Sequence record: MK250021.1
DNA length: 64,000 nt
Strand: one strand, 5' to 3'
The notes beneath the pieces were generated by a model. That model had not been told where the DNA came from, did no database searches, and was given only the letters and a program-made list of their open reading frames with translations. Made by a program: the position numbers and the translations under genes. This document shows, piece by piece, positions 11,321 through 62,860 of this stretch (the stretch's first letter is position 1; every line of letters begins with the position of its first letter).

Positions 11321-11989
11321 TCAATCTTTAATAATTTTTAAATCATCTGGTATATAACAATCACTACCTAAATATTTAATATATTCTTTAACTGGTTTCT
11401 TTACTTTTTTCCAATATAGTAAGTTATTATCTTTGCTTTGATAATATATATAACTATCAAAATATGTTATTTCTTCAATATTTCCATTATGTTCAACTTT
11501 ACATACTTTATAATTATCTTCATCGAAATAACTTGCAAGATCCATCCATACTAATAAATCTTCTAATATCATTATTGACAACGGTGAAGTGTTATATGTA
11601 TTAGTTTTTTTCTTTTCATATATAATATTTCCATTATTATCTTTCAATACTGTTAATCCTTTATAATCACCTGTAATTTGCCAATTTGGATTATCAATAA
11701 AATATTGTAATAAAAATTCTAATGGTTTTCGCTCGTCTTGGTTTATAGAATAATCTATTGAAAAATTATATTCACTAAACCTTAAATTATCTTCTATACA
11801 TTGTCGTATGTCTATAGCAAAATGTTGCTTCTAATCATGTGTTAATGTATAATATTCATATTTAGCAATATTTAATGCATGTTGATGTGCGGCTATTGTA
11901 TGTCTACCAATTGCATATCTATATGACATCCATACTAAATCTTCATGATAACTTTTATCAAATATATTATCCTAATCTTTTTTCTTCAT
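11321..11989 (-). CDS. Hypothetical protein, 222 aa (TAG at codons 6 and 53)
   Basis: ATG 11989 (MKKKD*DNIF) is in frame with track ORF 11321-11647. Confidence 0.7.
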
Positions 11990-12013
11990 ATAAAATAAAA
12001 AAGTCTATTTATA

Positions 12014-12042
12014 ATTATATAAAAATATACATAAGTTGTTTA
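12014..12042 (-). promoter_or_regulatory. Class II promoter TAAACA-N17-TATAAT
   Basis: Motif with 17-bp spacing upstream of the gene starting at 11989. Confidence 0.6.
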
Positions 12043-12078
12043 TTAATAAATATAATAAATAAAAATAAACTAATTATC

Positions 12079-12982
12079 ATGAAATTCATTAAATTATTTG
12101 ATAATAAAGAATAGTTAGATAATTATGCCAATGGAATTTCACATCGAGATGGTGCATTTATACTATCTGAAAAAAAAAAAAGAGAAACTAAGTATTATTG
12201 ATGAAAGACATCCAGGTCCAAACTGTATTTATGTATAGGATTTAAATATGTCTCCATTATCATTAGAATCAAATTCGTCGAAAGATGTAAAAGTTGGCTC
12301 AATATTATATGTAAACACTAATAATAAGTTAACATTAAATAATGAACCTGGTAATATGGCAATTGCTATATGTGTATGTCCATCAGTTACAGAAGATTTT
12401 GAAGCTGGTAATTCAACAGGTGAAAGTAAAGTAAAAACTGCACGTTTTTGTAGTCTTTACTATATGAATTAGGATATAGTAGGTACTGCTAGTATTAATG
12501 ATACAACAGTATAGTTTAATATGAAAGGATATACTATAGGAAATACATATGGTAATAGATCTAGTACTAGTTATATTGGTGGTAAAAAAAATACATAGAT
12601 ATTAGTAGAAAAATCATCATATTATTATGATACTAAAAGATTATTATGTAATATATCATTTTCTAATATTTATAATGGTGTTTTTCTTGGCTGTAATGCT
12701 GCAGTTTCTGCTGCTGTATATAGTATACGTGGTACAAAAAGAGGTGATTGGTATTTACCATCAGTGGGAGAATTAAAAGAGATGTATAGTAAAATTTCCA
12801 TAATCAATCCTATTAGAAAACAACTAGTTAATGAAGAATACAAAATGTAGGGGCATTATTGGACAAGTTATGAATATAATGCAGACAATGAATCTGCAAT
12901 ATTATTCACCAATGGTGCTATAACATATGCTGATAAAAAAATGAGTAAAAGAGTAATACCATTTTTAGCAGTTTCTATATAA
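12079..12982 (+). pseudogene. DUF1566/Lcl-like (C-type lectin fold) protein, frameshifted at an A12 run
   Basis: GDWYLPSVGELKEMY...HYWTS motif; 5 TAG; removing one A at 12170-12181 joins ATG 12079 to TAA 12980-12982. Confidence 0.6.
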
Positions 12983-12987
12983 AATAT

Positions 12988-13022: not shown

Positions 13023-13028
13023 TTTAAT

Positions 13029-14837: not shown

Positions 14838-14839
14838 AT

Positions 14840-24259: not shown

Positions 24260-24693
24260 NNNNNNNNNNNNNNNNNNNNNNNNNNNNNNNNNNNNNNNNN
24301 NNNNNNNNNNNNNNNNNNNNNNNNNNNNNNNNNNNNNNNNNNNNNNNNNNNNNNNNNNNNNNNNNNNNNNNNNNNNNNNNNNNNNNNNNNNNNNNNNNNN
24401 NNNNNNNNNNNNNNNNNNNNNNNNNNNNNNNNNNNNNNNNNNNNNNNNNNNNNNNNNNNNNNNNNNNNNNNNNNNNNNNNNNNNNNNNNNNNNNNNNNNN
24501 NNNNNNNNNNNNNNNNNNNNNNNNNNNNNNNNNNNNNNNNNNNNNNNNNNNNNNNNNNNNNNNNNNNNNNNNNNNNNNNNNNNNNNNNNNNNNNNNNNNN
24601 NNNNNNNNNNNNNNNNNNNNNNNNNNNNNNNNNNNNNNNNNNNNNNNNNNNNNNNNNNNNNNNNNNNNNNNNNNNNNNNNNNNNNNNNNNNNN
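24260..24693. other. Assembly gap (N run, 434 nt)
   Basis: Run of N. Confidence 1.
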
Positions 24694-32207: not shown

Positions 32208-33953
32208 TTAGAAATTATCATATGTTTGTTCAAGCATCTTAACATAATCCATATGATAACCAAGAGGATGTTCTGATTCATTTACAGGTTTCATAATAGG
32301 TTTTTGAGAAACTTTATAACGTTTAACAAATTCTTCATTCATTATACGTTGTGCTTCTCTATTTCTAAGACCAGTTTTCTCCCAGAACTCATCAACATCT
32401 TGTTTAGTTTCAAGAACCCAATAACGTGCCATATTCTCAATAGCATCTTGCTCTTGAAGAGAAGCATGTGTGTAAAGTTCAATATCTTTAGGATCAGCTA
32501 ATCTCAACCAATTCTTAAGGATACGTTTCTCTGCAAGAAGTGGAACATTCCATTGATTGTTAATATCATCAATCTTATAGATATTATGTTCTACTACATA
32601 TTTCATACATTTTTTCTTCTATGTAGGTTTAAGAGCCGCAAATTTCGCGAAGTTATCTGGTGATAATGAAACAGAGAATGGATAACGTGAAATAATCTGT
32701 TCTTTAATTGCTTCCTTTTTTTCGAGATTATCAAGAAGATCTTGGAATTCCTCCATATCTTTATCAGTTTCAGCTGCAATTCTTTCTGCTTTTTCTGTAG
32801 ATGTTTTTGAATCTTCGTCAGCAGGCACAGAATCTTCTGCATCATCATTAGTTGTATCTGTATCAGAAACGTCTTCATCTTTTGAATTATCATCTGAATC
32901 AGCATCACCATCATCGGCTTTATCCTCATCAGACTATCCTTCTACATCAAGAATATCTGCACGTTTTTCGGCTTTCTCATCATCGTCTGTATTTTCATCG
33001 GAATCACTATCAGCATCTTCTGATGTAATATCGAGGATTAATGCGCGTTTCTTTTCTTTCTCATCATCTGTAGGTTCTGATTTTGAATCTTCACTCTTAT
33101 TATCTTTTGTATCATTATTTTCATCTTTATTATCAGATGAATCGTCAGAACTACTACCATCTGGTGTTACGTCTGCTTCTGGTAATTTGAATTCTTCTTC
33201 ATCTTCTTCAAGTAATGGTTTTGATAAATCTTTCAAATTAACCGGTTTGTTTTTCATTTCCATACATTTTTCATTTATTGGAGCATCTTGCTCAAGTTCA
33301 TTGACTGTAACACCTTCCATAAGGACCTTATATTTCTTATTAGTTGTTTCTTTCTCTGATTTTTGAGCTGATACTGATTCATTGAGATATGACATAGTAT
33401 TAACTCCCAATGATTCATTAACCCTATCAAGTTTCGCTTCAGCGAAACCAGGAGTACAAACAATATCATATGTGAAAATCTGAGCGATTTCTACCTCATG
33501 TGTTTTCTCATCTACATCACCTGCTGCACGAGAAGAAACAAACAATGGATAACCTGCTTCTACTAATTCCTATGCAATTTTACCATTAGGTGTATCAAGA
33601 ATTTCAAGTTTACCCATTACATTATGATTTTCCTAATCATACCAAAGGTCTGTAATCTTATGTGAAGCTTCCTTTAACTAAATATCAAAACGTCCTTCAG
33701 GATGATCCAATTCACCAAGAATTGAACCACTTTCCTTAATCATCTCTCGTAAATATCCAAGGTGACGTAAAACTTCTTTTTCTGGATAACTTCTATTATT
33801 ACGGTTAATTACAACATGACCTGGAACAGAACATGCAGTAAATACACCGGAGAATATATATTTCTTATTATTTGGTGTACTGTCAAGAGACTCGTTAAGC
33901 GTAAGAGGCTACAATGACTTACTTTTTATCATTAACTTATTACTTTTTGTCAT
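32208..33953 (-). CDS. Prohead core protease (T4 gp21-like) fused to an acidic linker and a helical C-terminal domain, 581 aa (6 TAG)
   Basis: NRNNRSYP, GELDHP, DTPNG, VSSRAAG motifs; in frame through TAG with track ORFs 32934-33545, 32619-32828 and 32208-32606. Confidence 0.85.
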
Positions 33954-40231: not shown

Positions 40232-40621
40232 TTAATTTATTAATTCATAATAAGTTAATACTTTACAATATCCTGAATCCCAAGAATCATAATAAAAACC
40301 ATTTATAGATGCGACCACATGTCCTCTTAAATTCAATAAAAAATATCCTTTATCATATTTTTTTACAAATTCGCTAACGGTTAATCTATGTTGACCTTTA
40401 GTCATTCGGCCAAATGAACGTTTAACATAATTATGTTCTTTTAACCATAATTCAATTATCTTCCATTCATTAGGCATTCGTTTTTTCTTCCTACCTAATG
40501 CACATAATTCATCATAACATGTATACCAATCTCTATGAGTTAATTTCATCATAGCCCTTATGGCACAATCATCCGCATTCTTTTTCTGAGATACAAATTT
40601 AATATATCTATCATTGATCAT
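40232..40621 (-). CDS. Conserved phage hypothetical protein, 129 aa
   Basis: DCAIRA...GH...YDSWDSG pattern typical of phage proteins. Confidence 0.7.
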   Translation of the reverse strand: MINDRYIKFVSQKKNADDCAIRAMMKLTHRDWYTCYDELCALGRKKKRMPNEWKIIELWLKEHNYVKRSFGRMTKGQHRLTVSEFVKKYDKGYFLLNLRGHVVASINGFYYDSWDSGYCKVLTYYELIN

Positions 40622-40706
40622 AATTAATAAAATTAATTTATATAATAAAATATTAATCTATTTCTTTAAACAAAAAAATCTGGAAATTATAAACTTCCAG
40701 ATTTTC

Positions 40707-44297: not shown

Positions 44298-44476
44298 ATA
44301 TTTAATAAAATAAAAAAGTTTATAACATGTAGTTGCAAATTTACCTGTAATTAAAAAAGATACAGGTTTACCACTATTTTACATGTTGGACGAATGTCAA
44401 TATTATTATATATATGATATTTATCAATAAAGGCAAATCTATTCCTTAGATTTGCCTTTATTCTGCTATTTAATAA

Positions 44477-46027
44477 TTATGTAATTTCTTTTCGTTTTTC
44501 AAGTATATGTTTTAATATTTCATATTCTGTATTCGCTATTTTCTTATCCATTTTTGCTGCTTTACGCAATGCAAAATAATGTGTAAGAATCGCAGGAACA
44601 ACAGCATTTGGATCTTTTTTATAAACTGCGCCAGAACATGTTTTAATCTCATCAGATTTTGGGATATAATTCTTATCTTTGAATAAGAATGATTCAGGAG
44701 AAATTTGAAATTGTCTCATTATAGATGGATATAGTGACGCGAAATCTAATCCACCTATATATTTAAATATTCCTGGTCTAGTTGGCCACACAAAAGCTCC
44801 AACATATTGATTATCAGTTAGTTCTGTGTTTTTATTAAATGGTTTTTCTGGTATTACCTTATAATTTGGGTACACAAAGTTACACATAACAACATGTGTT
44901 GGTTGAATTGTAGAGAATGCGACATTTAGTTCAAGTCTCAATTCACATGCGAGCATATACCAAATTTCAGCAGTCTTTAAGAATCTGTCTATATGTTCAA
45001 CCAATATGGTATCGATGCAGTTATAGAAAACATATTCTTTGAAATGTTCTTCGAAGAATTCTTTGAATCCCCACGGGTGATTTACCTTCTTGATACCTAA
45101 CGCTTTTTCTGCGACAAAATCAAGTGTATTATTTTCTTTTGGTTGGATAGTCATGTCCCATGTTTTATAAACCAATAAGTAGTCATAAATTATTTTATGC
45201 ATAGGGACTTTCACATTGATTGTTTTACCACCGGATCTTGGAGTAATCTTAAAGTTTGTGAATGTTCTTGTAGGAGAAATTCTTTCAATATCAATATTAT
45301 TGATTTTACATCTATTATAGATATATAACCAGTCGAATCCTAGAAAATTCCATCCAGACATTGCAGGAATTGGTTCGATGAATGTTATATAGTCTTCAAG
45401 CATTTCCCGTTCTGTTGGAAAAAATCTGAATTCAAATTTATATCCTTTTGTAATATCTGATCCATTGTTTTCCTATGAATACTTATCGATTTGTTCTTGG
45501 ACCCATTGTTGTTCTTCTAATGTTAAGTCTTTACGTGACCAAATGATAGTCCTAGGAAATTGTGTCATTGATATAGTATTGATACGAGTTGACGCTTCTT
45601 CTGGATCTGGAAATCCTTCATCTGAAACTTCTGTCTCAATATCACACCACCATGTTGGAGGAATATTCATTTCAAACAGAGGATCAACTGCATGTCCAAA
45701 TGAATTAAGAATTTCATTTATTCTTAATTCAGGAAGTTTATCAACAGGATGCCTACGAACCCATTTATTATCATAAGATTTCCATTGGTGCATAACAGGT
45801 GAACCGTCTGGATTAAACTTATAACATTTGTTTACAAAATCATATTCTTGAAATGGAGGATCTGCATTTTGTCTGTTCGTATATTTCCATTCGAACATTG
45901 ATTCTTTAGGAACAGGATATTGAAGGAATTTAACTTGCCCTTGTTTATCTATATATGATACTATTAATTTCTTTGTCGGTGTGCCATCAGGCAATAAATA
46001 ATCTACCTATTCTTTATTAATTATCAT
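44477..46027 (-). CDS. polB: Family B DNA polymerase, N-terminal subunit (exonuclease, motif A, first finger helix), 516 aa (2 TAG)
   Basis: CDIET (ExoI), WNFLGFDW (ExoII), YNCID (ExoIII), GLDFASLYPSIMR (motif A), RKAAK; ends at TAA with no intein. Confidence 0.93.
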
Positions 46028-46052: not shown

Positions 46053-46661
46053 TTAAATTATTTTAGATATTATCTTTAATTTAAGAGCTTCTTCTGAAGT
46101 AAGAATCCAATCTTTCTTTCTTGAATAATTATCTTCAAGTTCTTTTCTTGTTATTGCTGTTTCTTCAATGATTAATTTATATATCATTTCAGTAAGTCTC
46201 TTCGCTTCTTTAACATCATCTTCTAAATCTGCTGTTTTCCCGATTGCAACAGAAGATGCTTGATGAATTAAGAATGTTGTATTCTTGGTCGCGAATCTTT
46301 GTTCATAAGGAACAGAAAGAAGAATACAAATACCTGCAGACATACATGCGCCAGTTGCAGTGATATTTGTCTTGCAATGATTATTAAGCATTATTAACAT
46401 ATCATGAATTGCATAACCTTGATAACATGTTCCTCCATATGTGTCTAACCATACATTAACATCTGGTATTTTAATTTCTTCTTTTATATTATGACCGAAA
46501 AATTCTTTTAATGCTTTTTTATTCTCATCAATTATATTATTATCCCCTGTAATTAAATTAGTTACCCATTTAATAATATCATCTGATGTTTTTTCATCAA
46601 TATCTTCTGTAATATATAAATTTCTCTTTGTTACATCAAATGTCTACAATTTATTTTCCAT
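46053..46661 (-). CDS. clpP: Divergent ClpP-like protease, 202 aa (TAG at codon 6)
   Basis: LDTYGG, ACMSAG (Ser), FLIHQ (His), DWILTSEEAL. Confidence 0.85.
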
Positions 46662-46726: not shown

Positions 46727-46806
46727 TATATAAAAAAGAGATAATAGAATTAAAATAAACTCTATTATCTCTAAAAATATATTTTCATTATTATAAAAAA
46801 AGATTG

Positions 46807-48018: not shown

Positions 48019-48031
48019 TACAAAGATACAT
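48019..48031 (-). promoter_or_regulatory. Class I promoter
   Basis: TACAAAGATACAT. Confidence 0.65.
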
Positions 48032-48052: not shown

Positions 48053-48712
48053 TTATTGTATTGTAATATTATATGTCCAACCATCTTTATTATATATTTG
48101 AGAGTCACTGGGAAAATAAACTACTCCAGCGTTTGGTATATCATATGTTCTAGTTTGATATTTTGAGGACGATTCTCCTATATTCATTGTTAGACTTACT
48201 ACAGTTTCAGAAGAAGTATATCTTATAACCATATCTACAACAATAGTATTTCCTACTGGTGAATTATTTTTATAAAAATAATTTTTTACTAAATATGCAC
48301 CATAAATCATTTTTGAACTATTCTGCATATTATACACAAACATTATATCTGCTTTTCTTTCATACACAGTAACAGTTTGCTAAACTTGGAATAATATATT
48401 TCCATTATACTTAAAAGTAATAAGGCGTGAAGATGTTGTTTCTGAGATATTATAGTATATTGACCGACCTGTTGTTTTATCTTCACTACTAGCTGCGTCA
48501 CTGACTCTCGCAGAGCATCCAGATGTATCGCATGTTAATGAAAAAGTATCATTTCCTAATTTATTATTAAAATTACCATCAATATCCTATAAACCAAAAA
48601 ATACCTATCTTGTTGGTAGAACACCAAAAGCACTTGTATCTAACATGCCACTTTTTGCATCCTAATTTATTTGCATAATATTTGTACCTGTATATTTCTA
48701 AAAAGTTGACAT
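48053..48712 (-). CDS. Beta-rich protein, ~219 aa (5 TAG), possible BACON-like tail/adhesion domain
   Basis: Open from ATG 48712 through TAG; S/T-rich; ETTSSRLITF...FQV*Q resembles a BACON C-terminus (weak). Confidence 0.55.
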
Positions 48713-48784: not shown

Positions 48785-49678
48785 ATGAAAAATAATTATT
48801 CATTTCAAATGAATTCTAAATAGATAGGGAAATTAATATATAATTTGGATTTGGGAAAATTCAATTATAAAACAAAATTATTTGAATCTAATAATAAAGA
48901 TAATTGGTGGAGAAATGAAGAATCATATAATACAATAAAATATCATCCATTAAATTCAAATACAAATAATCTATTGTATAAAGAATATGAACAAGAATAT
49001 CTATATGAAGGATTAATAAGTTCAGTAGAACCAAATAAAACAAAAAATATATTAGATAGAAATGCTGGAGGATTTATACATGATATACGCATTGTATATA
49101 ATCCTTTATAGTTAGATATGAAAACACCAGTTATTGATTTCTTTATATATAAAGAAGATTATTATGATTTAGAATATGGTAAAATTGCATATGATGAATT
49201 ATTAACATTAATTAATAATTTAGGATATTTTGTATCAGGTAAAACAGAATTATCAGATATTATAAATGTTGTTATAATGCCAAAATTTTTATACGAAGTA
49301 ACATATGAAATATATAAAGGAGATGGCTTTTTATTTCATATAACTCCATTATAGAATAAAAAGAAAATATTACAAAAAGGATTAATACCAAAATATAAAA
49401 ATTATAGGTTAGATAATTATCCAGATAGAATATATTTTTATACAAGTAAGCAAGAATCTAAATTAAATTTATTATGTAAAAATTTATCTAATAATACATG
49501 TATAAAAGATTGGTTAATTCTTAAAGTAAATATTAAAGATAAAAAAAGTTATAAAGAAAATGATAAATCTACAATGTACAGATTTTTTGAAGATCCAAAA
49601 TCATAGTATGGCATTTTTACATATGAAAATATAGATCCTTAGTGTATATCTATATATAAAGAAATAAGGTTATCATAA
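48785..49678 (+). CDS. Protein with a C-terminal ADP-ribosyltransferase/Tpt1-like fold, 297 aa (5 TAG)
   Basis: Joins track ORFs 48845 and 49118; LFHITP...ILQKGLIPK...PDRIYFY...YRFFEDP motif. Confidence 0.55.
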
Positions 49679-52893: not shown

Positions 52894-53868
52894 TTACCAA
52901 AGTGCGGCTGTATAACATAAGTTAGATGTTAATGTAGTATAACCAATAATAGATATAATTCTATTACAAGGTTCAAGAATCATTTTTTCAAATTGTTTAT
53001 CATAATCTATTTCAGGTGCATATTCTATTGGATAAGCGCCAGGTAAAAATGCAAAACAATCATAATTTCTATCCTTTGCATAATACCACTTAACTTTATC
53101 TGCTGTCTTAATAGGATTATACTTTACCTTATATTTCTTATTCTTTGGTTGATTCAAAATAAAGTTAGCAATTCCTGAAGCCTTAACCTGAATAGGACAA
53201 TGTTCTCCGAATACCAACTTATTCTTATCATCAAGAACGAACTTTTGATAATTTCCTATTGAACTACCTTTTGAAATCTCTGATGGATCTTTAAACATAA
53301 ACTGTTGTTTATATCCCTTTATTTTCGCAATAATATCTTCATATGGTGGTCTTTCCTTATGTTCCTGATACCAATGCAACATATAACATGTAAAGTCTTT
53401 TTGACATTCTCTTGCAAATGGTGGTGTAGAACCTTGAACGATCTCAAGTCCCTTATAAACGACTTCTTCCATTTGCTCCAAGAAAATATTAGGTTCCTTA
53501 AAACACTCTGCCATTGCATAATGTTTCTTTGAAGTCAAGATAGTTGTATCTGCAATTTTCTCTAACTCAAGATTCTGAATATTTACATCACAATTATATT
53601 TCTTTGCATATTCCTCATATTTCTGTTGCATATATGGTCCACAACCATAATTCCAAAGATCAACAACAAATTGTGCACATTTAGACTCTGGAATATCAAG
53701 CTGTTGACAAATTCTTCCAAATTCTACATATATTGAGTTGTGAGCCAGTATCTCATTTGCGAAGAATGTATGAGTATCATCTACCTCAATATCATATACA
53801 TACTCATCATTAAAATCTTCAAGTTGCTCTATTACATCAATATCCTCTACTTGTATATTGTAATTCAT
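52894..53868 (-). CDS. polB: Split-intein C fragment fused to the PolB C-terminal part (palm end and thumb)
   Basis: YVYDIEVDDTHTFFANEILAHN|SIY; then LELEKI, KKHYA, KGLEIV. Confidence 0.93.
   Translation of the reverse strand: MNYNIQVEDIDVIEQLEDFNDEYVYDIEVDDTHTFFANEILAHNSIYVEFGRICQQLDIPESKCAQFVVDLWNYGCGPYMQQKYEEYAKKYNCDVNIQNLELEKIADTTILTSKKHYAMAECFKEPNIFLEQMEEVVYKGLEIVQGSTPPFARECQKDFTCYMLHWYQEHKERPPYEDIIAKIKGYKQQFMFKDPSEISKGSSIGNYQKFVLDDKNKLVFGEHCPIQVKASGIANFILNQPKNKKYKVKYNPIKTADKVKWYYAKDRNYDCFAFLPGAYPIEYAPEIDYDKQFEKMILEPCNRIISIIGYTTLTSNLCYTAALW
53737..53868 (-). mobile_element. Split intein IntC (PolB), 44 aa, acidic
   Basis: Blocks F and G with terminal His-Asn and +1 Ser; own ATG. Confidence 0.92.
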
Positions 53869-53927
53869 CTTTTTTCTCCTATTATTAATTGTGTATTTTC
53901 AACATTATTAAAATGTTCTAATATATA

Positions 53928-53956
53928 ATTATATAAATAATTTTTTATATTGTTTT
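53928..53956 (-). promoter_or_regulatory. Class II promoter AAAACA-N17-TATAAT for IntC-polB(C)
   Basis: Motif with 17-bp spacing 60 nt upstream of ATG 53868. Confidence 0.55.
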
Positions 53957-54731
53957 TATATCTTCTCTATCTTTATGTGTTTTATAGAATATCCAGTTAT
54001 CAATAAAATATGGATAAATGAATAACATATTTAATTTATTATTTTTGCATCTTCCCATTTTTGAATATCAGTTTCTGTCCATGTATGAATTAATCCATCA
54101 TAATTATTTTTCGTATTTGTTTTAGAACATTTACTTAAAAAATAATTATACTTATCTTTATCTAATTCTTTATTATATAAACATTTATTATGCCAAAATG
54201 ATCCTTGATACTCTATATATAAATTATACTGTTTTATATAAAAATCACAATTATGATTATATTCTTTTGTTTTATAACATCTTATAACATCATCACCATA
54301 TAATTCATTTAAAAAAACATATAAAATTTCTTCTTCAATAGATGTTTTATATGATTTATGCTTATTATAAGATTCTGTGACTTTATCTTGTATTTCTGAT
54401 AACTATGAAATATAATCATCATCTATTACCATATCATATTATTATGTTCATTTCTATAATTCTTTTCATTATAACAACACTCATCGAATTTTTTCACTTT
54501 TTCTATATATTCATCTATAATATCAATACCTAAATATTTTGCATATATTATTTTTGCATCTGATATATCACATTTATCATTCATTGTAATACAATTAACA
54601 TTATTATTCAATGCAAAGTATATATCTTTATATGTTGATATTATTTGTTTAAGAAAATATTTTAATAACGTATTATGTTTCTTAAACATATTATTCCTTA
54701 TAATCCTTATTTTTGAACGATAATATATCAT
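53945..54731 (-). pseudogene. Degenerate Vsr/EDxHD-like homing endonuclease (two frameshifts)
   Basis: CDFYIKQYNLYIEYQGSFWH; frame breaks near 54430 and at an A5 run near 54042-54046. Confidence 0.7.
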
Positions 54732-55846
54732 ATTTCAGTTATATCATTTAATTGATCTTTATTATTAATCATCTATATAAGTGATTTTATAGTTCCTTTC
54801 TTATCATTTTTATATGTAGATTCCCAAACTATTATAACCTTGCAATTCAATGTCTGTTGAATATCTTCAATTCTTTCTCTATCATGATTCCATTTATCTT
54901 TAACTGAACGTCCGTTTCTTAATATAAAATAATTTGTTTCATTAGCATTATATTTCTTTGGATTAAAATGATAAAAATCTCCATAAAATTCTATAACAAT
55001 ATTTAATGATTTATCGTAATAATCTACATGATAAAAATTATTATTTAATAACTTAACTGTATATTCTATATAAGTATCATTATCTTTATAATATTCTTTT
55101 AAATGAGAAAATAACTCTAATGATATATTTGACTTATTACCTATTAAATAATATTGTTCTGAACGTTTTTCTACAAATTCATTATATTTTTGTGTTCCAT
55201 CTTCTTTACCGTATTCTTCGATAAAATAATCTAATGTACATGTATATCTCTGACGTTCGATATAAGCATTCCATATTTTTAAACCATCTATTTCACCATG
55301 TCTTTTAATAAGATTTTCCTTTGTTACCGCTCTAGATTTATTGTATTCATCAAATTTATCTTGAGACATACCATATTTTTCATGTTTATATTCATATGTA
55401 TTTGTAACTGATTGTTTATTACAATATGAATTCCATTTTTCTAATCCTATATCTTTTCCATATCGTTTAATCATTTTTTCTTTGGTAACACATTGTCTTT
55501 CTTTTGCTACAGGGTTGAAATCCTTATCAGGTACTCCAAATCCATACTACGTATATTTTGCAGCTTTATGCGCAAATTTAAATTTTACATCTTTAAAATT
55601 TGGAAATTTCTTGCATACACAATCATAACACCTACATAAATGATATTCATTACCATTATAATTTCTAGTACTTAAAAATGATAACTTATTATTATCACAT
55701 ACTATTTTATGTGTTTTTGAGTTTATATGAAATGTACCATTATCATATATAAGAAATTTACCACATTCTTTACAATAACATATTGATGGATCTATATTAT
55801 TATCTTTACAATATTGAACTACGTTCTATTCACTTAAATATTTCAT
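54728..55846 (-). CDS. Free-standing homing endonuclease (Vsr/EDxHD-like), 372 aa (3 TAG)
   Basis: Starts at a TAATG overlap with the IntN stop; Zn-ribbon Cys, K(R/Y)G repeats, VDYY...IEFYGDFYH. Confidence 0.85.
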
Positions 55847-56658
55847 TATCTATCTAATGTTATAATTTTATCAGATTTTTTTATTTCTCTTGCAGGAACA
55901 GATATTAATTCATTATTTCGTATAACCATTATACTATGATCACCTGTAACTATAAGCTCTTTACCGGATTTAGTTTTTAACCTAAACTTATCTTTAGTTA
56001 CTTTATGTCTCATTATATAATTAATCGGTCGTGTAATAGTTTTATAATCATGATCCTTATATGATAATGTATCGTGATTATGTACAGGAATGACTTCAGA
56101 CCCATTTTGTAATTTTATAACAACATCGTCATTTTCATATTTTGCTTTAGTAAAAAAGCCTTCCATTGAAAATACTTTATTATCTATAACTACTTGAGTA
56201 TCAGCAGTTTGCGAATCCGTATCCCCCGCTACAGTTAGTGATTGGTTTCCATCAAGATACGAAAACTCGGGTCCGTCCAACGTACCTGTTTCAGTTGTCT
56301 TACCTTTTGCGATACTTACTCGTTTTGCTTTCTCCGAATCAATACCGAGTTTCTTATGCAATTCTGTATCATTCTGAAATATACCACTGAAATACGCGTT
56401 AACAGAATTCTCAGAATAATGGTTCAAATCCTGACCCTGAAGAGTAATAGATTCTGCGACTGCTGTGTTATGCGCAATGAAATACTTGCTCGCGGTAGCT
56501 CCATAAACACTATTGATAAATTTCTTTAACGCTAACTGCTTAGTCTCATAAAAATCCCCTAAATTTTTTAATCTTTCTACTTCTTTTTCAAGTTCTTCAA
56601 TACTGCAATTCTCAGGGTCTACTTGGCAAAATTTATAATTCTTATGTTGTTCTTCCAT
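55846..56658 (-). CDS. polB: PolB middle part (motifs B and C) fused to split-intein N fragment
   Basis: QLALKKFINSVYG (motif B); AGDTD|SQTADT; block B LIVTGDHS; TAA stop. Confidence 0.93.
   Translation of the reverse strand: MEEQHKNYKFCQVDPENCSIEELEKEVERLKNLGDFYETKQLALKKFINSVYGATASKYFIAHNTAVAESITLQGQDLNHYSENSVNAYFSGIFQNDTELHKKLGIDSEKAKRVSIAKGKTTETGTLDGPEFSYLDGNQSLTVAGDTDSQTADTQVVIDNKVFSMEGFFTKAKYENDDVVIKLQNGSEVIPVHNHDTLSYKDHDYKTITRPINYIMRHKVTKDKFRLKTKSGKELIVTGDHSIMVIRNNELISVPAREIKKSDKIITLDR
55849..56214 (-). mobile_element. Split intein IntN (PolB), 122 aa, Ser-initiated
   Basis: Inserted after DTD of motif C; TxxH block B; lacks blocks F/G. Confidence 0.9.
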
Positions 56659-56747: not shown

Positions 56748-58406
56748 ATGGAAATTACAGATCAAATTATAATAGATAAGTTAACAGTATTTAGACATAA
56801 TAAAATACAATTAAATACATGTAGAATAAAAGAAACATGGTTAAAAGATCATGGTTTATATGAGTATTTAATTAATAGATTTAAAACCATAGATAATATT
56901 CAAGAAATTATATATAGGATATATTATAAATTACCGGATAATTTACAGTTACATTGTAATACTTGTGGTAATGAAATACCTTTACAATTTAGAGGATTCT
57001 TATATGGATATAATCAATATTGTTCTTATAAATGTTCTTTAAATGATCCAAATAAAATACATAAATTAACAAATGTAAAACAAAAAGATGATATAGATGA
57101 TAATTATGTATTGAATTTAATGATTAAAGACAATAGATTAGTTTCAGAATATTGTAAGAATAAAAAACTTAAACAATTTGGTATATATGATTATATGATG
57201 AATAGATATGGCGATTTACAGAAAAATAAATCTATTATTCAAGAAATTATATATAGAATGAAATATCATATAGATAAATCTCCTCGATGTCCAACATGTG
57301 GGAAATATGTTAACTTTTATAGATTTAGTGAAGGATTCAGACATTATTGTTCAAATGAATGTGCAAATAAGAATGAAAATAATGTTAACATAAAATTAAA
57401 TAATAAGCATAAAACTATAGAAAATAAATGGTTAAACCGTGGATATAAAATTAAATATACAGAAAATAAAAATGAATTTCTTGTATATAATCAATGTAAT
57501 TTACATAATCCATTTAAAATTAAAAAATATACATTCTTTAATAGACAAGGAAAAGATATAATTATGTGTCCTATTTGTAATCCTGAAAAAAATATGGAGA
57601 CTTCTATAGAATATAAAATTAGGTTAATATTAGAGAAACATAATATAAAATTTACGCAACATGTTAGGTATATAATATCACCAAGGGAATTAGACTTTTA
57701 TTTACCTGCTTATAAAGTAGCAATAGAATGTAATGGGATTTATTGGCATTCAGGGATAAACGGTAAAAATAGATTTAAAGTTAAATATGAACTATTATCC
57801 AAAACTGATATATAGATGTTAACTTTTTGGGAAGACGATATTCATTATAACATTGATAAGATAGAAAATATCATATTAAGAAGTTGCAATTTAGAAAAGA
57901 AATTATTTTCAAATGATACTGTTATTAGAGAAATAGATATTGATATATGTAAGTCATTTATTAATAATAACTCAATTAAAAAATATATTATATCTAATAT
58001 AAATTTAGGTTTATTTAAGGATGATAAATTATTATTTGTTATGACATTTTCAAATAATAATGATAATAATTATACATTAAATCAAATATGTTATAAAAAT
58101 AATTTATATGTTATAAATTCTGAAAAATTATTATTATATTATTTTTTTAATAATTATAAATTTAATAAATTGATAACATATTGCGATTTAAAAATTGAAA
58201 ATAATAAATTATATGAAAAATTAGGATTCAAATTAAATAGTGATAAATTAAAATTTAATCTGAATTATTATAATTATAGAACAACTGAACATAGAATTAA
58301 TAAGAAAGAAGTTAATCAATTATTGAAATTAGATGATTCTGATTCATTAGAAGATTATATGAAATGTTATTCAGGATATTTAATATATGAGAAAGAGAAT
58401 GTATAA
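56748..58406 (+). CDS. Homing endonuclease (Vsr/EDxHD, Hef-like C-terminus), 552 aa (one TAG)
   Basis: Track ORFs 56748-57815 and 57816-58406 join through TAG; duplicated CxxCG/CSxxC modules; LDFYLP...AIECNGIYWH. Confidence 0.82.
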
Positions 58407-58413
58407 TTTAAAT

Positions 58414-59634
58414 TTATATACATTCTCTTTTATTATTTTCTAAATATTCATTTATTATAGTTTTTATTATTTCTATCTTATTGCTCCATATAGGAAGATA
58501 ATTCAGATTATTCATTTTCGCAGTTTGACATTTAAAAGGATCAATGATTGACCAAACATTTACAGCAGATTTATATTGTTTTGATATTTCTGCTTTTTGT
58601 TTCCACTTATTTAATAAATCAATATCATCTTTATTATCTTCATCAAATAAATGTTTCCCATGTGTCCAAAATGCGTTTATCTCTATAAATAAATCTAATG
58701 GTTTTATATAGAAATCTACATGGAATGGATAACGCTCATCAACATTTACATTAAACTATATATCATCTTTATCAAATATTGTTTGTAAATATTCATATGT
58801 TTGATATTCTGGTTTTGACATACCAAAATTATCTTTATATTTTTTCTTTATTGTTTTTACATATTGATCAAACTAATATTGATGAAAATTTTCTAATGAA
58901 CCATATTTTTTAATAACAGTTTCTTTTGTCTTTTCTTTATTATTAAATGTTGGATCCCCATATAATTCTAATTTTGTTTCTTTAATTTTGTTTTTTATTT
59001 CTTCATTTTTTGCAGGGTTATCAACGCCATATTTTTTAATAACAGTTTCTCTTGATTTTTCTTTATTATTATCTGACTAAAAACTATATTTACACCCATA
59101 TTTTTTTAAACATGTATTAATTGATTTCTATTTAACTTCTTCATTCTATCCTGAAAATTCTACANNNNNNNNNNNNNNNNNNNNNNNNNNTGTCTTCTAT
59201 AAATATTCCGATGTTTTTGTATATGATGAAACTCCATATTTTTCTAAACATGTTTGTTTTATTTTATCTTTAACTGATTTTAACTACATTTGATGTTCAA
59301 CACCATATCGTTCTTTTAATGTATTTTTTATTTTATTCTATACATTAACTGAATTCATTACACATCGTGAATTTGAACAAAATTTACGAAATCCTCTACT
59401 ATAACAATTAAATCTCACAGGTTTCCCACATGTTTCACATACTGGTCTTATTTCTATTTTATTTACAATACGGTATATTGTCTCCTATATAGATTCGCTA
59501 TCATTATATCTATTAATTAAATAATCATAAATATCTTGATGTTTATTTAACCAAGATAATCTTGTATAATTTTTTGCTAACTAATTCTTTTTTGTTATAA
59601 ATTTTTCTTTTATGTAGTCATCATTAATAATCAT
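58414..59634 (-). CDS. Homing endonuclease (Vsr/EDxHD-like) with KYG repeats, many TAG, spans a 26-nt gap
   Basis: CETCG/CSNSRC, repeated T..KKYG units, VDFYIKPLDLFIEINAFWTHG; absent from the track. Confidence 0.78.
59165..59190. other. Assembly gap (N run, 26 nt)
   Basis: Run of N inside a repeat-rich endonuclease gene. Confidence 1.
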
Positions 59635-59725
59635 ATCTAATAATAAATTATTATTATTTTTAATTATATAAAAAATGAGGTAAATAGTTTTTAACAGAAT
59701 TAAAACTATTTACCTCATTAATATA

Positions 59726-60463
59726 TTAATTAATACTTGCTTCTTTTATAGGATCTTCATCATTATCATTTTCATCTGAAATACCCATTGTTTCCTCCAA
59801 ATCTTTAACATCATCAAATGCAGATTGATCTGGTAATTGGAACATTGGGTGAATAACATGCTCATTTATATAATCAAGATATTCTGGTGTAAATACCTTA
59901 TCAGACCAAAATTCAGTAAAAGGAACTTGTTCATTAAGATGTTTTACTACAATATACCTTGCTGTATCTTTCGGTAAACAATAATGTGTTTCACCATCAT
60001 CTGTTGTCCATGTATATACTTTCTTTTTATCTGAATCTGATAATTTATCATATTCTTTTTGCGTAAGTAAATTTCCTCTACAAACACCTGAATTGTCCCA
60101 TGTCATAAATTGTTCCAAACCAACATATGGGTTAGGTTTTTTAAAATATGGAATTTGAAATTTCACTTTAATTGGTCTGCAAAAACGAGACTTAACTGGT
60201 TTTGCTGTAACTAAAACACCATTCTTTGTACCTGCATCAGAACCTTGTCTTGATTTTGCAGCTGAATCATTCTCTTTATCTTCCAGTTTAGCAGCACTTA
60301 ATTCAATTGTAATTGATGCATTATATACAATACCTGAATTATGATTTATAATACCATTTGCAGAAACATAATTATGTGTGTCTTTAACTGTTAAATCTAT
60401 TACATCCTCACTTAATTCTGACTATATCTTCTTTACAATCTTTAACTTTCTATATTTCATCAT
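59726..60463 (-). CDS. uvsX: Split-intein C fragment fused to the UvsX/RecA C-terminal part, 245 aa (TAG at codon 14)
   Basis: MMKYRKLKIVKKI*SELSEDVIDLTVKDTHNYVSANGIINHN|SGIVYNAS...KSRF; in frame with track ORF 59726-60166. Confidence 0.9.
60338..60463 (-). mobile_element. Split intein IntC (UvsX), 42 aa, basic N-terminus
   Basis: Blocks F and G; His-Asn then +1 Ser. Confidence 0.9.
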
Positions 60464-61799
60464 TTATATATTGCGTTATTTTTTTATATTCTAAATATTT
60501 AAAAACTGTTTCTGAAATTCTAACAATACCTAATACATTATTATCTATTAATAAAATATCATTATCTCTTTGCTTATCCAATTCTTCCTAATGAAATACA
60601 CCTTGTCCACCATCATATTCAAATATAATTATTTTACCTTTATATTCTAAATACCCATCACATGCATAAAATATTTTATTTCGTGTTTTATCTGATATTT
60701 CATCTGGAATTATTACTATATATGGTTTATGAATGATTTTCTTATCGATATATTTTTGTAAAAATTCAAAACATCTATTTTCTGATTCTGATATATTTGT
60801 CATCCAGCCACCTTTTATTTTACATAAAAAGTTATCACTATGTTTCCAATTTTTCCAAATATTTTTTGCTAAATTTGATTGTAATTCTTTTTTCTTTAAA
60901 TAATCTTCATATGATTTATAACCTTTATATTCCTCACATGATGGATTAATTTCATGCACTTTTAATTTAGCTTCATCATCAGAATATCCTAACTTCTTCC
61001 AATAATTAAACGTCCATACACTATGTTCTTTTGCATAATATGAAGCTTTCTTTTTTGCATCCTCTATAGTTAGCCCTAAATTTAACCAATATTTTGTTGT
61101 GCTTTTAGAACATGTTGAATTATTCTATTAAACTTTACTTACTTCTATTTTTGCGTCTTCTAATGTATAACCTTTATTTAACCAATATTCAACACAACGC
61201 GGTGATCTATTTTTATTTAATTCTCGTATAATTGATTCTGCTTCAGTATCACTATATCCTCGTGCTAAATAAAACGATTTACTACTTTTAATATATCCTT
61301 TATTCTACTTATCAGGATAATATTGTTTACACCAAATCATTAACTAATCATTAATATCTCGTTCTGTTATAAAATCAGAAAATGTTATGAAATTTATAAA
61401 TCTTTTAATAAAAGAAATATTATTCAAATTAAATGAATATTTATTATCTTTAATGAATGAATTAAATATATCATCTTTATTAAAATATACAACTGTCTTT
61501 TTATACTTATTTAATATAATTTTTTTATATTCATCAAATGAATATCCTCTAACATCCCAATATAAAAATGTTGTATTTTTATGTTTATTTGTAATATTCT
61601 TTAAATAATTTAATAATATATCTATTATTTCTTGAGAGCCATATACTTTATTTTCACTAAATAACTATTGTAACTTATTAATATACTATGTATTATTTGT
61701 ATTAATATTAAAATTATAAAACTTATTATATTTGTTTATAAACTATATAAACTCATTTATATCAAATACATTTATTTCTACTTTTTTCATATTAAACAT
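60408..61799 (-). pseudogene. Homing endonuclease (Vsr/EDxHD-like) inside uvsX, with an in-frame TAA at 61128-61130
   Basis: Four (F/Y)W/Y..(K/L/R)G(Y/L)...(E/D)A repeats; CDGYLEY...IFEYDG...FH; overlaps the IntC start by 56 nt. Confidence 0.75.
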
Positions 61800-61885
61800 T
61801 TCAAATTTTTGATTATTTTATACCTTATAATATTTATTCATATATAAAGTAAAAATAATCAAAAATTAAAAAATATTTTATGGTA

Positions 61886-62860
61886 TTATTCAGAAATTGC
61901 ATAAATTTCATCATTTTCATTTAATTCTGAAACTATTTTCCATGAGCTATCCAACTCTGGTTTATCAGGATTAATAAGAAATCTATGTGTATTTGAACAT
62001 GTAATAGTCTCTCCATTATCAAATGTAAATGTATATGTCGGTTTTTTAAAATGCCAAAGTTTCTCTACATCATGATATTCACCATCATGTGACAATACTT
62101 TATCTCCAACAACAACATCTTTCATTTGTTTAATTCCATTATTTGTAATAATTTTTTCATCTGGTCGTAAACAACCCATTGCTTGTATATTCTGAGGAAT
62201 AAATGACATAGATTGATATACATGGTTCACTACAATCCAAGGAATTTGCAATTTTGCAATTGGAGTAGCACAAACTCTAAACATTGCTTTAGTATCTTTT
62301 GCTTTTGTAAAATCTGCTTTTTGTGAACCTGACAATGTATCTTCACGTTCCTTTTCAGATGTTAAATTTCCGAGAGAATCCAATACAATAATAACTTTAT
62401 CATGTTGACCATACTTATCTTGTTGTTCTTGCAATTTATCACATAAATTTGCAATAAATTGGCTTGTCTCCATAATTGTATTAACTTTTTTAATAATTAA
62501 TTTAGATGGATCTACTCCAAGACGCCTAACAAAATCAGAATCTATTGCACCTTCAGAATCAAGATAAATTGGAATATAACCTAATTTTTGAGCTTCCCTA
62601 CAACATGAACATGCTAAAAAAGATTTACCAGCGCCAGATGTACCCGAGAACGTTACAACTCTACCAGTCGGTATTGCTTTATAAATATCACCTGAACAAC
62701 ATGCATTTAAAATATAATTACCTGTTGAAATCCATTCTTTTATATTTGAATACGCTGAATCTGCAATAATTTCAGCTTGATCATCTATACTACTTACCAT
62801 TGACATTAATGAACCAATACCACCTTCAAAATCTTCGCTTGACTACTTTTTCTTTGCCAT
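61886..62860 (-). CDS. uvsX: UvsX/RecA N-terminal part fused to split-intein N fragment, 324 aa (TAG at codon 6)
   Basis: ISTGN..LN, Walker A GTSGAGKS, YLDSE, Walker B IIVLDS, VVNHVY, then AMG|CLRPDEK. Confidence 0.95.
61889..62173 (-). mobile_element. Split intein IntN (UvsX), 95 aa, Cys-initiated
   Basis: Block A CLRPDEKI, VGDKVL, block B TCSNTHRF; acidic end; TAA stop. Confidence 0.92.

What the first reader, a model, noticed from the sequence alone, without database searches (positions are those of the whole stretch)
11321..62860. TAG codons placed just after the start codon: a possible translational gate on replication, protease and virion genes
Seen: the first TAG is at codon 5 (gene 48712), 6 (uvsX-N 62843, clpP2 46644, gene 11989), 7 (polB-N 46007, HEG 55826), 12-15 (DUF1566, GIY-YIG, ART-like, uvsX IntC, prohead protease) and 18-19 (two HEGs). 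In uvsX-N, uvsX-C and clpP2 it is the only TAG, although other Gln use CAA/CAG. Genes such as clpP1, pseT, infA, trxA, polB-mid and polB-C have none. Known: recoded phages enrich TAG in late and lysis genes. Inference: one 5'-proximal TAG aborts translation cheaply until suppressor tRNA or RF1 inhibition is established, and here it reaches recombination and replication genes.
Basis: partly seen in the sequence, partly recalled or inferred. Interest (0 to 1): 0.8.

Follow-up and report, generated by a model that had tools for sequence, protein, structure and literature searches.

The report
Early amber codons in Lak megaphage genes
In this Lak megaphage, genes that otherwise avoid the recoded TAG (glutamine) codon carry it mostly within their first ~30 codons; the bias is real and repeats in related phages, but "failure is cheap near the start" explains it as well as a purpose-built translational gate.

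Summary
The window is a Lak-B megaphage (100% identical to Lak-B2/B4 over 3.1 kb) that reads TAG as Gln. Two similar cases that I found in my own ORF list are start-call artefacts.

The bias is not chance. In the window, 18 of 24 TAG-bearing genes have their first TAG within 30 codons (8.7 expected). Across Lak-B2, genes with 1-3 TAGs score 65 of 102 against 33.6 expected. The bias survives start validation against Lak-A1, and it repeats in Lak-A1 and in a distant Lak-like contig. CAA and CAG stay flat along genes, so neither AT bias nor Gln bias explains it.

The "gate" reading is only partly supported:
- The 5' TAG share rises to the level of heavily recoded genes but not above it.
- Early TAGs are kept no better than early CAAs.
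- Some early TAGs swap to CAA or CAG in Lak-A/C.

My best reading is that selection against TAG relaxes near the start in TAG-poor genes. A leaky dependence on the suppressor tRNA follows as a side effect.

New context: a host-type promoter motif precedes only TAG-free genes, and a T4-late-like motif precedes TAG-bearing ones.

The parts
61886..62860 (-). uvsX-N (RecA domain) fused to an N-terminal intein half. Its only TAG is codon 6 (62843-62845), beside 13 CAA/CAG.
   Evidence: Pfam RecA plus Intein/Hint. The ATG and the TAG are conserved in Lak-A1 with 5/5 identical residues before the TAG and in IMG/VR relatives; an 84%-identical relative has TAG at codons 5 and 10.
46053..46661 (-). clpP2. 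Its only TAG is codon 6 (46644-46646), and there is no other ATG/GTG/TTG for 82 codons.
   Evidence: Pfam CLP_protease. Lak-A1/A2/C1 have CAA at this codon with the ATG conserved. Next start 82 codons on.
44477..46027 (-). polB-N (exonuclease plus start of the polymerase domain). TAG at codon 7 (46007-46009) and codon 185.
   Evidence: Pfam DNA_pol_B_exo1 and DNA_pol_B. TAG7 is conserved in Lak-A1/A2/C1 and four IMG/VR contigs.
11321..11989 (-). Unknown gene with TAG at codons 6 (11972-11974) and 53, and an ATAAATA motif upstream.
   Evidence: In Lak-A1 the ATG is conserved, codon 6 is GAC, and a different TAG sits at codon 4.
54728..55846 (-). TAG at codons 7 (55826-55828), 100 and 358, with no other start for 118 codons.
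   Evidence: Lak-A1 has GAT at codon 7 but TAG at codon 11. Only a weak nuclease hint in Pfam.
48053..48712 (-). Unknown gene. From the ATG at 48712 its first TAG is codon 5 (48698-48700); five TAGs in all.
   Evidence: The upstream TTG of the longest ORF is not conserved.
48809..49678 (+). The probable start is the second ATG (48809), which makes TAG 48821-48823 codon 5; from the first ATG it is codon 13.
   Evidence: A 1-nt indel in Lak-A1 breaks the frame of the first ATG, while ATG-AAT-TCT-AAA-TAG is conserved.
59726..60463 (-). IntC plus uvsX-C. Its only TAG is codon 14 (60422-60424), inside the intein C-terminal splicing block.
   Evidence: Pfam Intein_splicing covers residues 7-42; one TAG beside 7 CAA/CAG.
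32208..33953 (-). Prohead protease (S77). Six TAGs, the first at codon 15 (33909-33911), with an ATAAATA motif upstream.
   Evidence: Pfam Peptidase_S77. Codon 15 is CAG in Lak-A/C. Motif.
58414..59634 (-). DUF7487 ORF with its first TAG at codon 18 (59581-59583). It spans assembly gap 59165-59190, so it may be two genes.
   Evidence: It was left out of all ortholog and statistical work because of the N run.
61128..61799 (-). ORF between the two uvsX halves. Five TAGs, the first at codon 19 (61743-61745), with an ATAAATA motif upstream.
   Evidence: no significant Pfam family.
46737..46772 (-). Terminator-like hairpin (15-bp stem plus T-run). It separates the TAG-free unit behind the host-type promoter at ~48025 from the clpP2/polB-N pair.
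48019..48030 (-). One of nine exact copies of TGTATCTTTGTA in the window, all on the - strand. It is a host-type (Bacteroides -7 box TAnnTTTG) promoter-like motif. Six copies lie within 60 nt of a called ATG, always of a TAG-free gene. The other copies are at 10844, 15564, 17064, 18900, 27943, 30442, 40198 and 44285.
   Evidence: Nine matches against 0.03 expected. Class association.

Best explanation
TAG is a glutamine codon whose reading depends on a phage amber-suppressor tRNA, so it is risky whenever suppression is incomplete.

Lak genes fall into three classes:
- Genes behind host-type promoters are TAG-free.
- Genes behind T4-late-like ATAAATA promoters use TAG for about half of their Gln codons, evenly along the gene.
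- An intermediate class avoids TAG in the gene body. It includes replication, recombination and nucleotide-metabolism genes, clpP2 and the major capsid protein.

In the intermediate class, selection against TAG weakens towards the start codon. A ribosome that terminates at codon 5-30 wastes almost nothing and leaves no truncated protein. TAGs arising by mutation (CAG, AAG or GAG to TAG) therefore persist there and are purged further in. The first ~30 codons drift up to the neutral TAG share while the body stays TAG-poor.

The consequence is that the output of these genes is tied to suppressor activity. This is a leaky gate or attenuator, but it is a by-product rather than a selected device.

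Shown: the codon meaning, the positional gradient, its replication in other lineages, and the promoter classes.
Inferred: the cost gradient, the timing of expression, and the efficiency of suppression.
For: TAG means Gln:
- At orthologous sites beyond codon 30 in Lak-A1, 320 of 820 TAGs are kept and 200 are CAA or CAG.
- A tRNA(CUA) lies at Lak-B2 415547-415619 and is closest to the phage tRNA-Gln(CUG).
- The phage release-factor gene is TAG-free.

Gradient:
- In validated genes with 1-3 TAGs, TAG per 1000 codons falls from 52.6 (codons 5-7) to 21 (11-20), 11 (31-50), about 5 (51-200) and 2.8 (>200). Non-TAG Gln codons (CAA+CAG) do not rise towards the 5' end.
- Classing genes by body only: in TAG-free bodies (n=125) TAG/Gln is 0.18, 0.08, 0.07 and 0.03 at codons 5-10, 11-20, 21-30 and 31-50. 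In low-TAG bodies (n=20, body share 0.14) it is 0.75, 0.67, 0.40 and 0.17. In heavy genes it is flat at about 0.5. Fisher tests give p 7e-7 and 1e-11.

The 5' share reaches the heavy-gene level but does not exceed it (14/22 vs 49/97, p 0.35). The share of genes with a TAG in the first 30 codons is also similar (12/20 vs 40/80).

There is no TAG-specific conservation: early TAG 20/30 vs early CAA 43/74.

C-terminal tails show no such rise at 4-30 codons from the end, so loose protein constraint alone does not explain the skew.

Replication: Lak-A1 49/98 vs 23.8 expected. Distant Lak-like contig G002 33/74 vs 20.9 expected, p 7e-5.

Promoter classes.
Against: - Some early TAGs are strictly conserved across Lak-A, B and C (polB-N TAG7, uvsX TAG6, capsid TAG11). 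The capsid gene keeps one TAG beside 26 CAA/CAG although it is probably the most highly expressed gene. These look more like retained features than drift, but those proteins are 89-98% identical between clades, so the test is weak.
- In the window the TAGs pile up at codons 5-7. Genome-wide, codons 2-4 are depleted against 5-7 (3/31 vs 14/37, p 0.01). A simple linear cost does not predict that.
- Genes that lost the site often have another TAG nearby in Lak-A1 (4 of 17 within 30 codons, and others at 31-38).
- No expression or translation data exist for Lak phages, so the cost gradient is untested.
Confidence: 0.5

Rival explanations
1. Adaptive 5' amber gate. One TAG placed just after the start is selected because it blocks translation of middle-class and capsid genes until the suppressor tRNA has accumulated or RF1 is inhibited. 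It does so at minimal cost, and a ribosome waiting at codon 5-7 may also cover the start site.
For: - The same positional data as for the best explanation.
- Strict conservation of polB-N TAG7, uvsX TAG6 (with TAG at codons 5 and 10 in an 84%-identical relative) and capsid TAG11 as the only TAG among 27 Gln codons.
- Turnover to a neighbouring codon: 11321-11989 codon 6 becomes codon 4, and 54728-55846 codon 7 becomes codon 11.
- A peak at codons 5-7 with depletion at 2-4.
- clpP2 and polB-N form an isolated two-gene unit, set off upstream by a terminator-like hairpin and downstream by a hairpin and the next host-type motif. Both genes carry the TAG at codon 6-7.
Against: - The 5' TAG share is not above the level of heavily recoded genes.
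- Early TAGs are not retained better than early CAAs.
- clpP2 TAG6, protease TAG15, 36853 TAG21 and 37301 TAG28 are CAA or CAG in Lak-A/C.
- Compensation is not above the gene-class baseline (4/17 vs 7/38).
- Only 11 of 125 genes with TAG-free bodies have an early TAG.
- Capsid codon 11 is Lys in more distant relatives.
- These genes are never directly behind host-type promoters, so a translational gate would be largely redundant with transcription timing.
Confidence: 0.3
2. Start-codon artefact. With TAG read as sense, ORFs are extended upstream through a non-coding TAG to a chance ATG, and the true starts lie downstream.
For: This is true for some cases. In 40232-40747 the TTG is not conserved and the ATG lies four codons after the TAG. 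ORFs 12098, 21198 and 21966 start with TTG or GTG and are doubtful.
Against: - With starts required to align to an ATG in Lak-A1, the skew stays (33/57 vs 15.0 expected, p 1.6e-10).
- Substitutions between the ATG and the TAG fall 49/34/99 on codon positions 1/2/3, like the coding sequence downstream (179/105/410).
- There is no alternative start for 82 (clpP2), 118 (54728-55846), 41 (capsid) and 54 (Mre11-like) codons.
- The IntC TAG lies inside a Pfam domain match.
- Orthologs have CAA or CAG at the site.
Confidence: 0.03
3. Composition effect. N-termini are AT-rich, Gln-rich or loosely constrained, and TAG simply follows that.
For: N-terminal tails are Lys/Glu-rich, and AAG or GAG is one step from TAG. 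Several lost early TAGs are Lys/Asn/Asp/Glu codons in Lak-A1.
Against: - TAG and CAA have the same G+C content, yet CAA density is flat along genes while TAG/Gln changes 5- to 10-fold.
- The null that shuffles TAG among each gene's own Gln codons is rejected.
- Heavily recoded genes show no gradient.
- C-terminal tails show none.
- Many early TAGs sit in fully conserved N-termini, with 10/10, 13/13 and 27/27 identical residues.
Confidence: 0.02
4. Mini-ORF with re-initiation. ATG plus 4-6 codons plus TAG is a leader peptide that ends at TAG, and the real protein starts at a nearby downstream codon.
For: uvsX-N has ATGs 13 and 15 codons after the TAG. Some genes have a start 1-5 codons after it. 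The pair TAG-ATG at 57813-57818 is conserved in Lak-A1.
Against: - Start codons within five codons of the TAG occur in about 10 of 33 genes, near the roughly 20% I estimate from start-codon frequencies (an estimate, not computed).
- Many genes have no start for 40-118 codons.
- Residues before the TAG are conserved and evolve as coding sequence.
Confidence: 0.05

Closest known systems
Stop-codon recoding (TAG to Gln, code 15) in Lak and crAss-like phages, proposed to time late and lysis gene expression (Devoto 2019 preprint 10.1101/356790; Crisci 2021 PMC8346664; Borges 2021 preprint 10.1101/2021.08.26.457843)
   Same: Same phage clade and same code. The machinery matches: a suppressor tRNA(CUA), a universal tRNA(UUA) and a TAG-free phage release factor. 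There are TAG-free and TAG-rich gene sets, and Lak replication genes are already noted as 'mostly encoded in alternative code'.
   Different: Those papers treat genes as recoded or not. In the texts I could search they say nothing about where in a gene the TAG sits. New relative to those texts are the within-gene 5' gradient in TAG-poor genes and the sorting of TAG classes by two upstream motifs. The published Nature Microbiology version of Borges et al. was not in the library.
Translational ramp, or special codon usage in the first 5-30 codons of bacterial genes
   Same: It is a position-dependent codon choice confined to the first tens of codons and linked to the cost or efficiency of early elongation.
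   Different: The ramp concerns slow sense codons and mRNA structure. Here the codon is a conditional stop, so failure ends translation instead of slowing it. The effect is also seen only in one gene class.
T4-type temporal classes (early host-type promoters; late TATAAATA promoters read with gp55)
   Same: There is a host-type motif before one gene set and an ATAAATA motif 20-39 nt before the ATG of another. The core genes are T4-like (gp23, gp32, uvsX, gp43). A small sigma-region-2-like ORF also exists in Lak-B2 (a weak Pfam hit below the cut-off).
   Different: Promoter function is inferred from motif enrichment only, and no transcript data exist. The early motif follows the Bacteroides -7 box TAnnTTTG, not the E. 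coli sigma-70 boxes. The T4 comparison rests on my own knowledge.
Engineered amber-gated genes (an N-terminal UAG that makes expression depend on an orthogonal suppressor tRNA)
   Same: One early UAG makes protein output depend on a suppressor and leaves only a tiny peptide on failure.
   Different: That is a designed system. Here no selection for the TAG could be shown.

Membership tests
Code-15 (TAG=Gln) recoded Lak megaphage | In-frame TAG inside conserved genes, and coding density restored when TAG is read as sense | tested here: met
   TAGs lie inside polB, RecA/UvsX, ClpP, S77 protease and intein domains. The window is 100% identical to Lak-B2/B4 over 3.1 kb. In the related contigs G002 and G003, coding density rises from 0.70-0.72 to 0.88-0.90.
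Code-15 (TAG=Gln) recoded Lak megaphage | TAG aligns with Gln codons in orthologs | tested here: met
   Of 820 TAGs beyond codon 30, Lak-A1 has TAG at 320, CAA at 132 and CAG at 68. Examples: clpP2 TAG6 is CAA and protease TAG15 is CAG.
Code-15 (TAG=Gln) recoded Lak megaphage | Phage-encoded suppressor tRNA(CUA) and a release factor that is itself TAG-free | tested here: met
   The window has no tRNA gene. In Lak-B2 outside the window, tRNA(CUA) lies at 415547-415619 and tRNA(UUA) at 346127-346199. tRNA(CUA) is closest to the phage tRNA-Gln(CUG) at 73%. The RF-1-domain ORF 292737-293873 has no TAG. Charging with Gln was not tested.
Selected translational gate (5' amber codon as a regulatory device) | TAG is placed near the start more often than chance, controlling for Gln and AT usage and for start calls | tested here: met
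Selected translational gate (5' amber codon as a regulatory device) | Frequency of the early TAG exceeds the neutral level (positive selection for presence) | tested here: not met
   The 5' TAG/Gln share is 14/22 in TAG-poor genes against 49/97 in heavy genes (p 0.35). Genes with an early TAG: 12/20 vs 40/80. Only 11 of 125 genes with TAG-free bodies have one.
Selected translational gate (5' amber codon as a regulatory device) | The early TAG is conserved as TAG more than synonymous codons at the same positions, or is replaced by a nearby TAG when lost | tested here: inconclusive
   Retention at codons 2-10 is 20/30 for TAG and 43/74 for CAA (p 0.5). Compensation is 4/17 against a class baseline of 7/38 (p 0.7). 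Single cases are strictly conserved (polB-N, uvsX, capsid). Only two deep lineages were compared.
Selected translational gate (5' amber codon as a regulatory device) | Protein output of these genes depends on suppressor level or on time after infection | not testable with these tools
   There is no culture, Ribo-seq or proteome of a Lak infection.

The most novel reading that the evidence does not exclude
Lak megaphages use a single amber codon at codons 5-30 as a selected translational checkpoint. It defines a 'middle' expression class between TAG-free early genes and TAG-rich late genes. The class includes DNA polymerase, UvsX, ClpP, nucleotide-metabolism enzymes and the major capsid protein. 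The position is tuned so that a ribosome waiting or terminating there costs almost nothing and covers the initiation site.
Probability: 0.3. Interest if true: 0.8.

Novelty: new variant of a known kind. Interest (0 to 1): 0.55.

Why it matters
How recoded phages live in standard-code hosts is an open question. So far the evidence is gene-level: which genes contain the recoded stop.

A within-gene gradient adds a second, quantitative read-out. It shows that in one class of genes TAG is still costly, so decoding is ambiguous when they are translated, and that the cost scales with distance from the start.

Together with the two upstream motifs, this gives a sequence-only way to split Lak genes into early, intermediate and late classes. 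It also names concrete test genes for reporter assays: clpP2, polB-N, uvsX and the capsid gene.

It matters for annotation as well. Callers that demand TAG-free starts will truncate these genes, and longest-ORF callers will over-extend others.

Tried and rejected
- **phAss-1 (OQ749652), an independent TAG-recoded phage outside Lak.** At 44% GC my crude longest-ORF caller gave many false ORFs. The result was 20 vs 15.4 expected, p 0.07. This is inconclusive and I do not use it as evidence.
- **A third upstream motif specific to 5'-TAG genes.** I found none beyond ATAAATA.
- **Compensation test.** Loss of a site paired with a new nearby TAG is significant against all genes (p 0.003) but not against the proper class baseline (p 0.7). 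I rejected it as evidence for a gate.
- **Nucleotide after the TAG.** A follows TAG somewhat more often than it follows CAA (0.43-0.46 vs 0.31-0.35), and CAG is similar. There is no clear suppression-context signal.
- **Start codon within five codons after the TAG (re-initiation).** The rate is not above my rough estimate of chance.
- **TAG near the 3' end.** There is a small excess in the last three codons. I kept this as a side note, not as part of the finding.
- **clpP2 relatives in IMG/VR.** Only one identical locus was found.
- **Whole-genome file.** None is held for this window. I therefore used Lak-B2 outside the window's range, and I skipped Lak-A1 177501-184099 near the homolog of gap 1.

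Full report
**What the window is.** The window has 25.7% G+C, no tRNA genes and two N runs. A 3.1-kb stretch is 100% identical to Prevotella phages Lak-B2 and Lak-B4 and about 80% identical to Lak-A1, A2 and C1. Lak phages are known to read TAG as Gln, to carry tRNA(CUA) and tRNA(UUA), and to encode RF2. Borges et al. already note that Lak replication genes are mostly in alternative code. No whole genome is held for the window. I therefore fetched Lak-B2 outside the window's range and Lak-A1. I skipped the stretch of Lak-A1 near the homolog of gap 1. ORF 58414-59634 contains gap 2 and was left out of every comparison. No gap letters were looked up.

**The gaps.** Gap 24260-24693 lies between two genes and affects no claim. 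Gap 59165-59190 lies inside ORF 58414-59634. Its 26 N are not a multiple of three. Both flanks match the N-terminal half of the DUF7487 profile rather than successive halves. Continuity is therefore not shown, and two genes or a collapsed repeat are possible. The TAG at codon 18 lies upstream of the gap and stands.

**The observation.**
- uvsX-N plus an intein N-half: TAG at codon 6.
- clpP2: codon 6.
- polB-N: codon 7.
- Gene 11321-11989: codon 6.
- ORF 54728-55846: codon 7.
- The gene starting at 48712: codon 5.
- IntC plus uvsX-C: codon 14, inside the intein domain match.
- Prohead protease: codon 15.
- Two further ORFs: codons 18 and 19.

uvsX-N, uvsX-C and clpP2 each have a single TAG beside 13, 7 and 3 CAA/CAG. 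clpP1, pseT, polB-mid and polB-C have none.

Some cases do not hold or stay open. In my own longest-ORF list, the TAG at 'codon 5' of 40232-40747 lies upstream of the conserved ATG, and ORFs 21198 and 21966 are doubtful.

**Is it chance?**
- *Window:* 8 of 24 TAG-bearing genes have the first TAG at codon 7 or earlier (3.0 expected when TAG is shuffled among each gene's own Gln codons, p 9e-4). 18 of 24 have it within 30 codons (8.7 expected, p 7e-6).
- *Lak-B2 plus window (545 ORFs):* 331 have no TAG, 102 have 1-3 and 112 have four or more. In the 1-3 class the first TAG is within 30 codons in 65 genes against 33.6 expected (p 7e-17). Genes with four or more TAGs are nearly flat.
- *Replication:* Lak-A1 gives 49/98 against 23.8 expected. 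A distant Lak-like contig, with a capsid protein 63% identical, gives 33/74 against 20.9 expected, p 7e-5.

**Is it a start-call artefact?** This was the main worry, and it is excluded for most genes.
- When the ATG must align to an ATG in the Lak-A1 ortholog (323 genes), the skew stays: 33/57 against 15.0 expected, p 1.6e-10.
- Between the ATG and the first TAG, differences between Lak-B2 and Lak-A1 fall 49/34/99 on codon positions 1/2/3. That matches the coding pattern downstream, 179/105/410.
- clpP2, ORF 54728-55846, the capsid gene and others have no alternative start for 41-118 codons.

**Is it composition?** No.
- CAA has the same G+C content as TAG and is flat along genes.
- I classed genes by their body alone (codons beyond 50), so the 5' end plays no part in the classing. 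Genes with TAG-free bodies (n=125) have TAG/Gln of 0.18, 0.08, 0.07 and 0.03 at codons 5-10, 11-20, 21-30 and 31-50. Genes with a low body share (0.14, n=20) have 0.75, 0.67, 0.40 and 0.17. Heavy genes are flat near 0.5 (Fisher p 1e-11 and 7e-7).
- C-terminal tails show no rise at 4-30 codons from the end.

**What the TAG means.** At orthologous sites beyond codon 30, TAG in Lak-B2 is TAG in 39% and CAA or CAG in 24% of Lak-A1 sites. clpP2 TAG6 is CAA and protease TAG15 is CAG in Lak-A/C. Lak-B2 carries a tRNA(CUA) that is closest to its tRNA-Gln(CUG). It also has a TAG-free release-factor gene.

**Which genes carry it.** Sparse, early TAGs occur in:
- uvsX, polB-N and clpP2;
- a gp23-like major capsid gene, whose only TAG is codon 11 of 667, beside 26 CAA/CAG;
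- an Mre11-like phosphoesterase (codon 9), NrdD (16), Hsp90 (11), dUTPase (8), a 5'-3' exonuclease (28) and a helicase (30).

The capsid TAG is shared by Lak-A and Lak-B but is Lys (AAG or AAA) in more distant relatives. uvsX TAG6 and polB-N TAG7 are conserved in all close relatives found, and one 84%-identical uvsX has TAG at codons 5 and 10.

**Gate or tolerance?** A selected gate predicts three things: early TAGs above the neutral level, TAG-specific conservation, and compensation when a site is lost. None is seen clearly.
- The 5' share in TAG-poor genes (14/22) equals that of heavy genes (49/97).
- Retention at codons 2-10 is 20/30 for TAG and 43/74 for CAA.
- Compensation is 4/17 against a class baseline of 7/38.
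- Several early TAGs are CAA or CAG in the sister clade.

The simplest account is therefore that selection against TAG, strong in the bodies of these genes, fades towards the start, because termination there is cheap and leaves no truncated protein. The gene's output still becomes coupled to suppression, so a leaky gate exists as an effect.

Some points keep the adaptive version alive at roughly 0.3:
- the strictly conserved single TAGs in polB-N, uvsX and the capsid gene;
- the pile-up at codons 5-7 with depletion at codons 2-4 (p 0.01);
- the clpP2/polB-N pair, both with TAG at codon 6-7, sitting apart from the flanking TAG-free units. A terminator-like hairpin lies upstream, and a hairpin plus the next host-type motif lie downstream.

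**Promoter context (new, partly followed).**
- *Host-type motif.* The 12-mer TGTATCTTTGTA contains the Bacteroides -7 box TAnnTTTG (consensus cited in PMC4747536). It occurs nine times in the window, all on the - strand, against 0.03 expected. It lies 20-49 nt before ATGs. Its strict core precedes 34 of 331 TAG-free genes, 0 of 112 heavy genes and 0 of 65 sparse-early genes. In Lak-A1 the counts are 28/320 and 0/218.
- *Late-like motif.* ATAAATA resembles the T4 late promoter (my own knowledge). At 12-45 nt before the ATG it precedes 56/112 heavy, 22/65 sparse-early and 29/331 TAG-free genes. The association repeats in Lak-A1 and in the distant contig.

So 5'-TAG genes are not immediate-early genes. 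This fits a middle or late class in which the suppressor is present but perhaps limiting.

**Literature.** Full-text searches found no statement about the position of recoded stops within phage genes. The final journal version of Borges et al. was not available, so prior mention cannot be excluded.

**Verdict.** It is a new variant of the known link between stop-codon recoding and timing. Interest is moderate to high.

Noticed in passing
window 10844, 15564, 17064, 18900, 27943, 30442, 40198, 44285, 48019 (12-mers, - strand): TGTATCTTTGTA occurs nine times against 0.03 expected. It contains the Bacteroides -7 promoter box TAnnTTTG. Genome-wide in Lak-B2 and Lak-A1, its strict core precedes only TAG-free genes. 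It is likely the host-RNA-polymerase (early) promoter of Lak phages.
   Followed up: partly
window, for example upstream of 33953, 37179, 11989, 6523 and 61799; Lak-B2 genome-wide: ATAAATA lies 20-39 nt before the ATG of about half of the heavily TAG-recoded genes and 9% of TAG-free genes. It resembles the T4 late promoter and repeats in Lak-A1 and a distant Lak-like contig.
   Followed up: partly
window 57813-57818 (+), inside ORF 56748-58406: TAG at codon 356 is followed at once by ATG, and the junction is conserved in Lak-A1. The stretch may make two proteins when TAG is read as stop and a fusion when it is read as Gln. A weak Vsr-like (and DUF559) hit lies just before or across the junction.
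   Followed up: partly
Lak-B2 201773-202180 (-), 283723-284076 (+), 295319-295879 (+); window 38912-39166 (-): TAG-poor genes have a TAG as the last or near-last codon (135/135, 114/117, 180/186, 83/84). Two of them sit directly behind the host-type promoter motif. TAG may still be the real stop of early genes, backed up by a nearby TAA or TGA.
   Followed up: partly
Lak-B2 346127-346199 (outside the window): A tRNA with anticodon UUA (ochre-type) is present beside the tRNA(CUA). Crisci et al. report it as universal in Lak and unexplained, since TAA still appears to act as a stop.
   Followed up: no
window 59726-62860 and 52894-56658 (- strand): uvsX and polB are each split by what look like split inteins: an IntN at the end of one ORF and an IntC at the start of another, with TAG-bearing ORFs in between. 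polB-N lies about 7 kb downstream of polB-C on the same strand. The intein-associated ORFs carry early TAGs while the extein parts polB-mid and polB-C carry none.
   Followed up: partly
window 59165-59190 and flanks 58414-59634: Both sides of the 26-N gap match the N-terminal half of DUF7487. This suggests two tandem copies, or a repeat that the assembly could not resolve, rather than one continuous gene.
   Followed up: partly
window about 12079-12201 (+): For the Lcl_C/DUF1566 gene, an ATG in another frame gives a TAG at codon 12. That frame overlaps the main frame's start and includes a run of about 12-13 A (read off the print; not computed). This could be transcriptional or translational slippage, or an assembly error.
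   Followed up: no
window 44426-44462 and 46737-46772: Two long hairpins bracket the clpP2/polB-N pair. The upstream one has a T-run on the - strand; the downstream one was called on the + strand and is a perfect palindrome. The pair may form its own transcription unit between two units driven by host-type promoters.
   Followed up: partly
Lak-B2 405724-406110 (+), locus L012:13724-14110: A small ORF with a weak sigma-70 region-2 match (below the Pfam cut-off), possibly a gp55-like late sigma. It has TAGs at codons 20, 33 and 46 and an ATAAATA motif upstream. If real, late transcription itself would depend on suppression.
   Followed up: no
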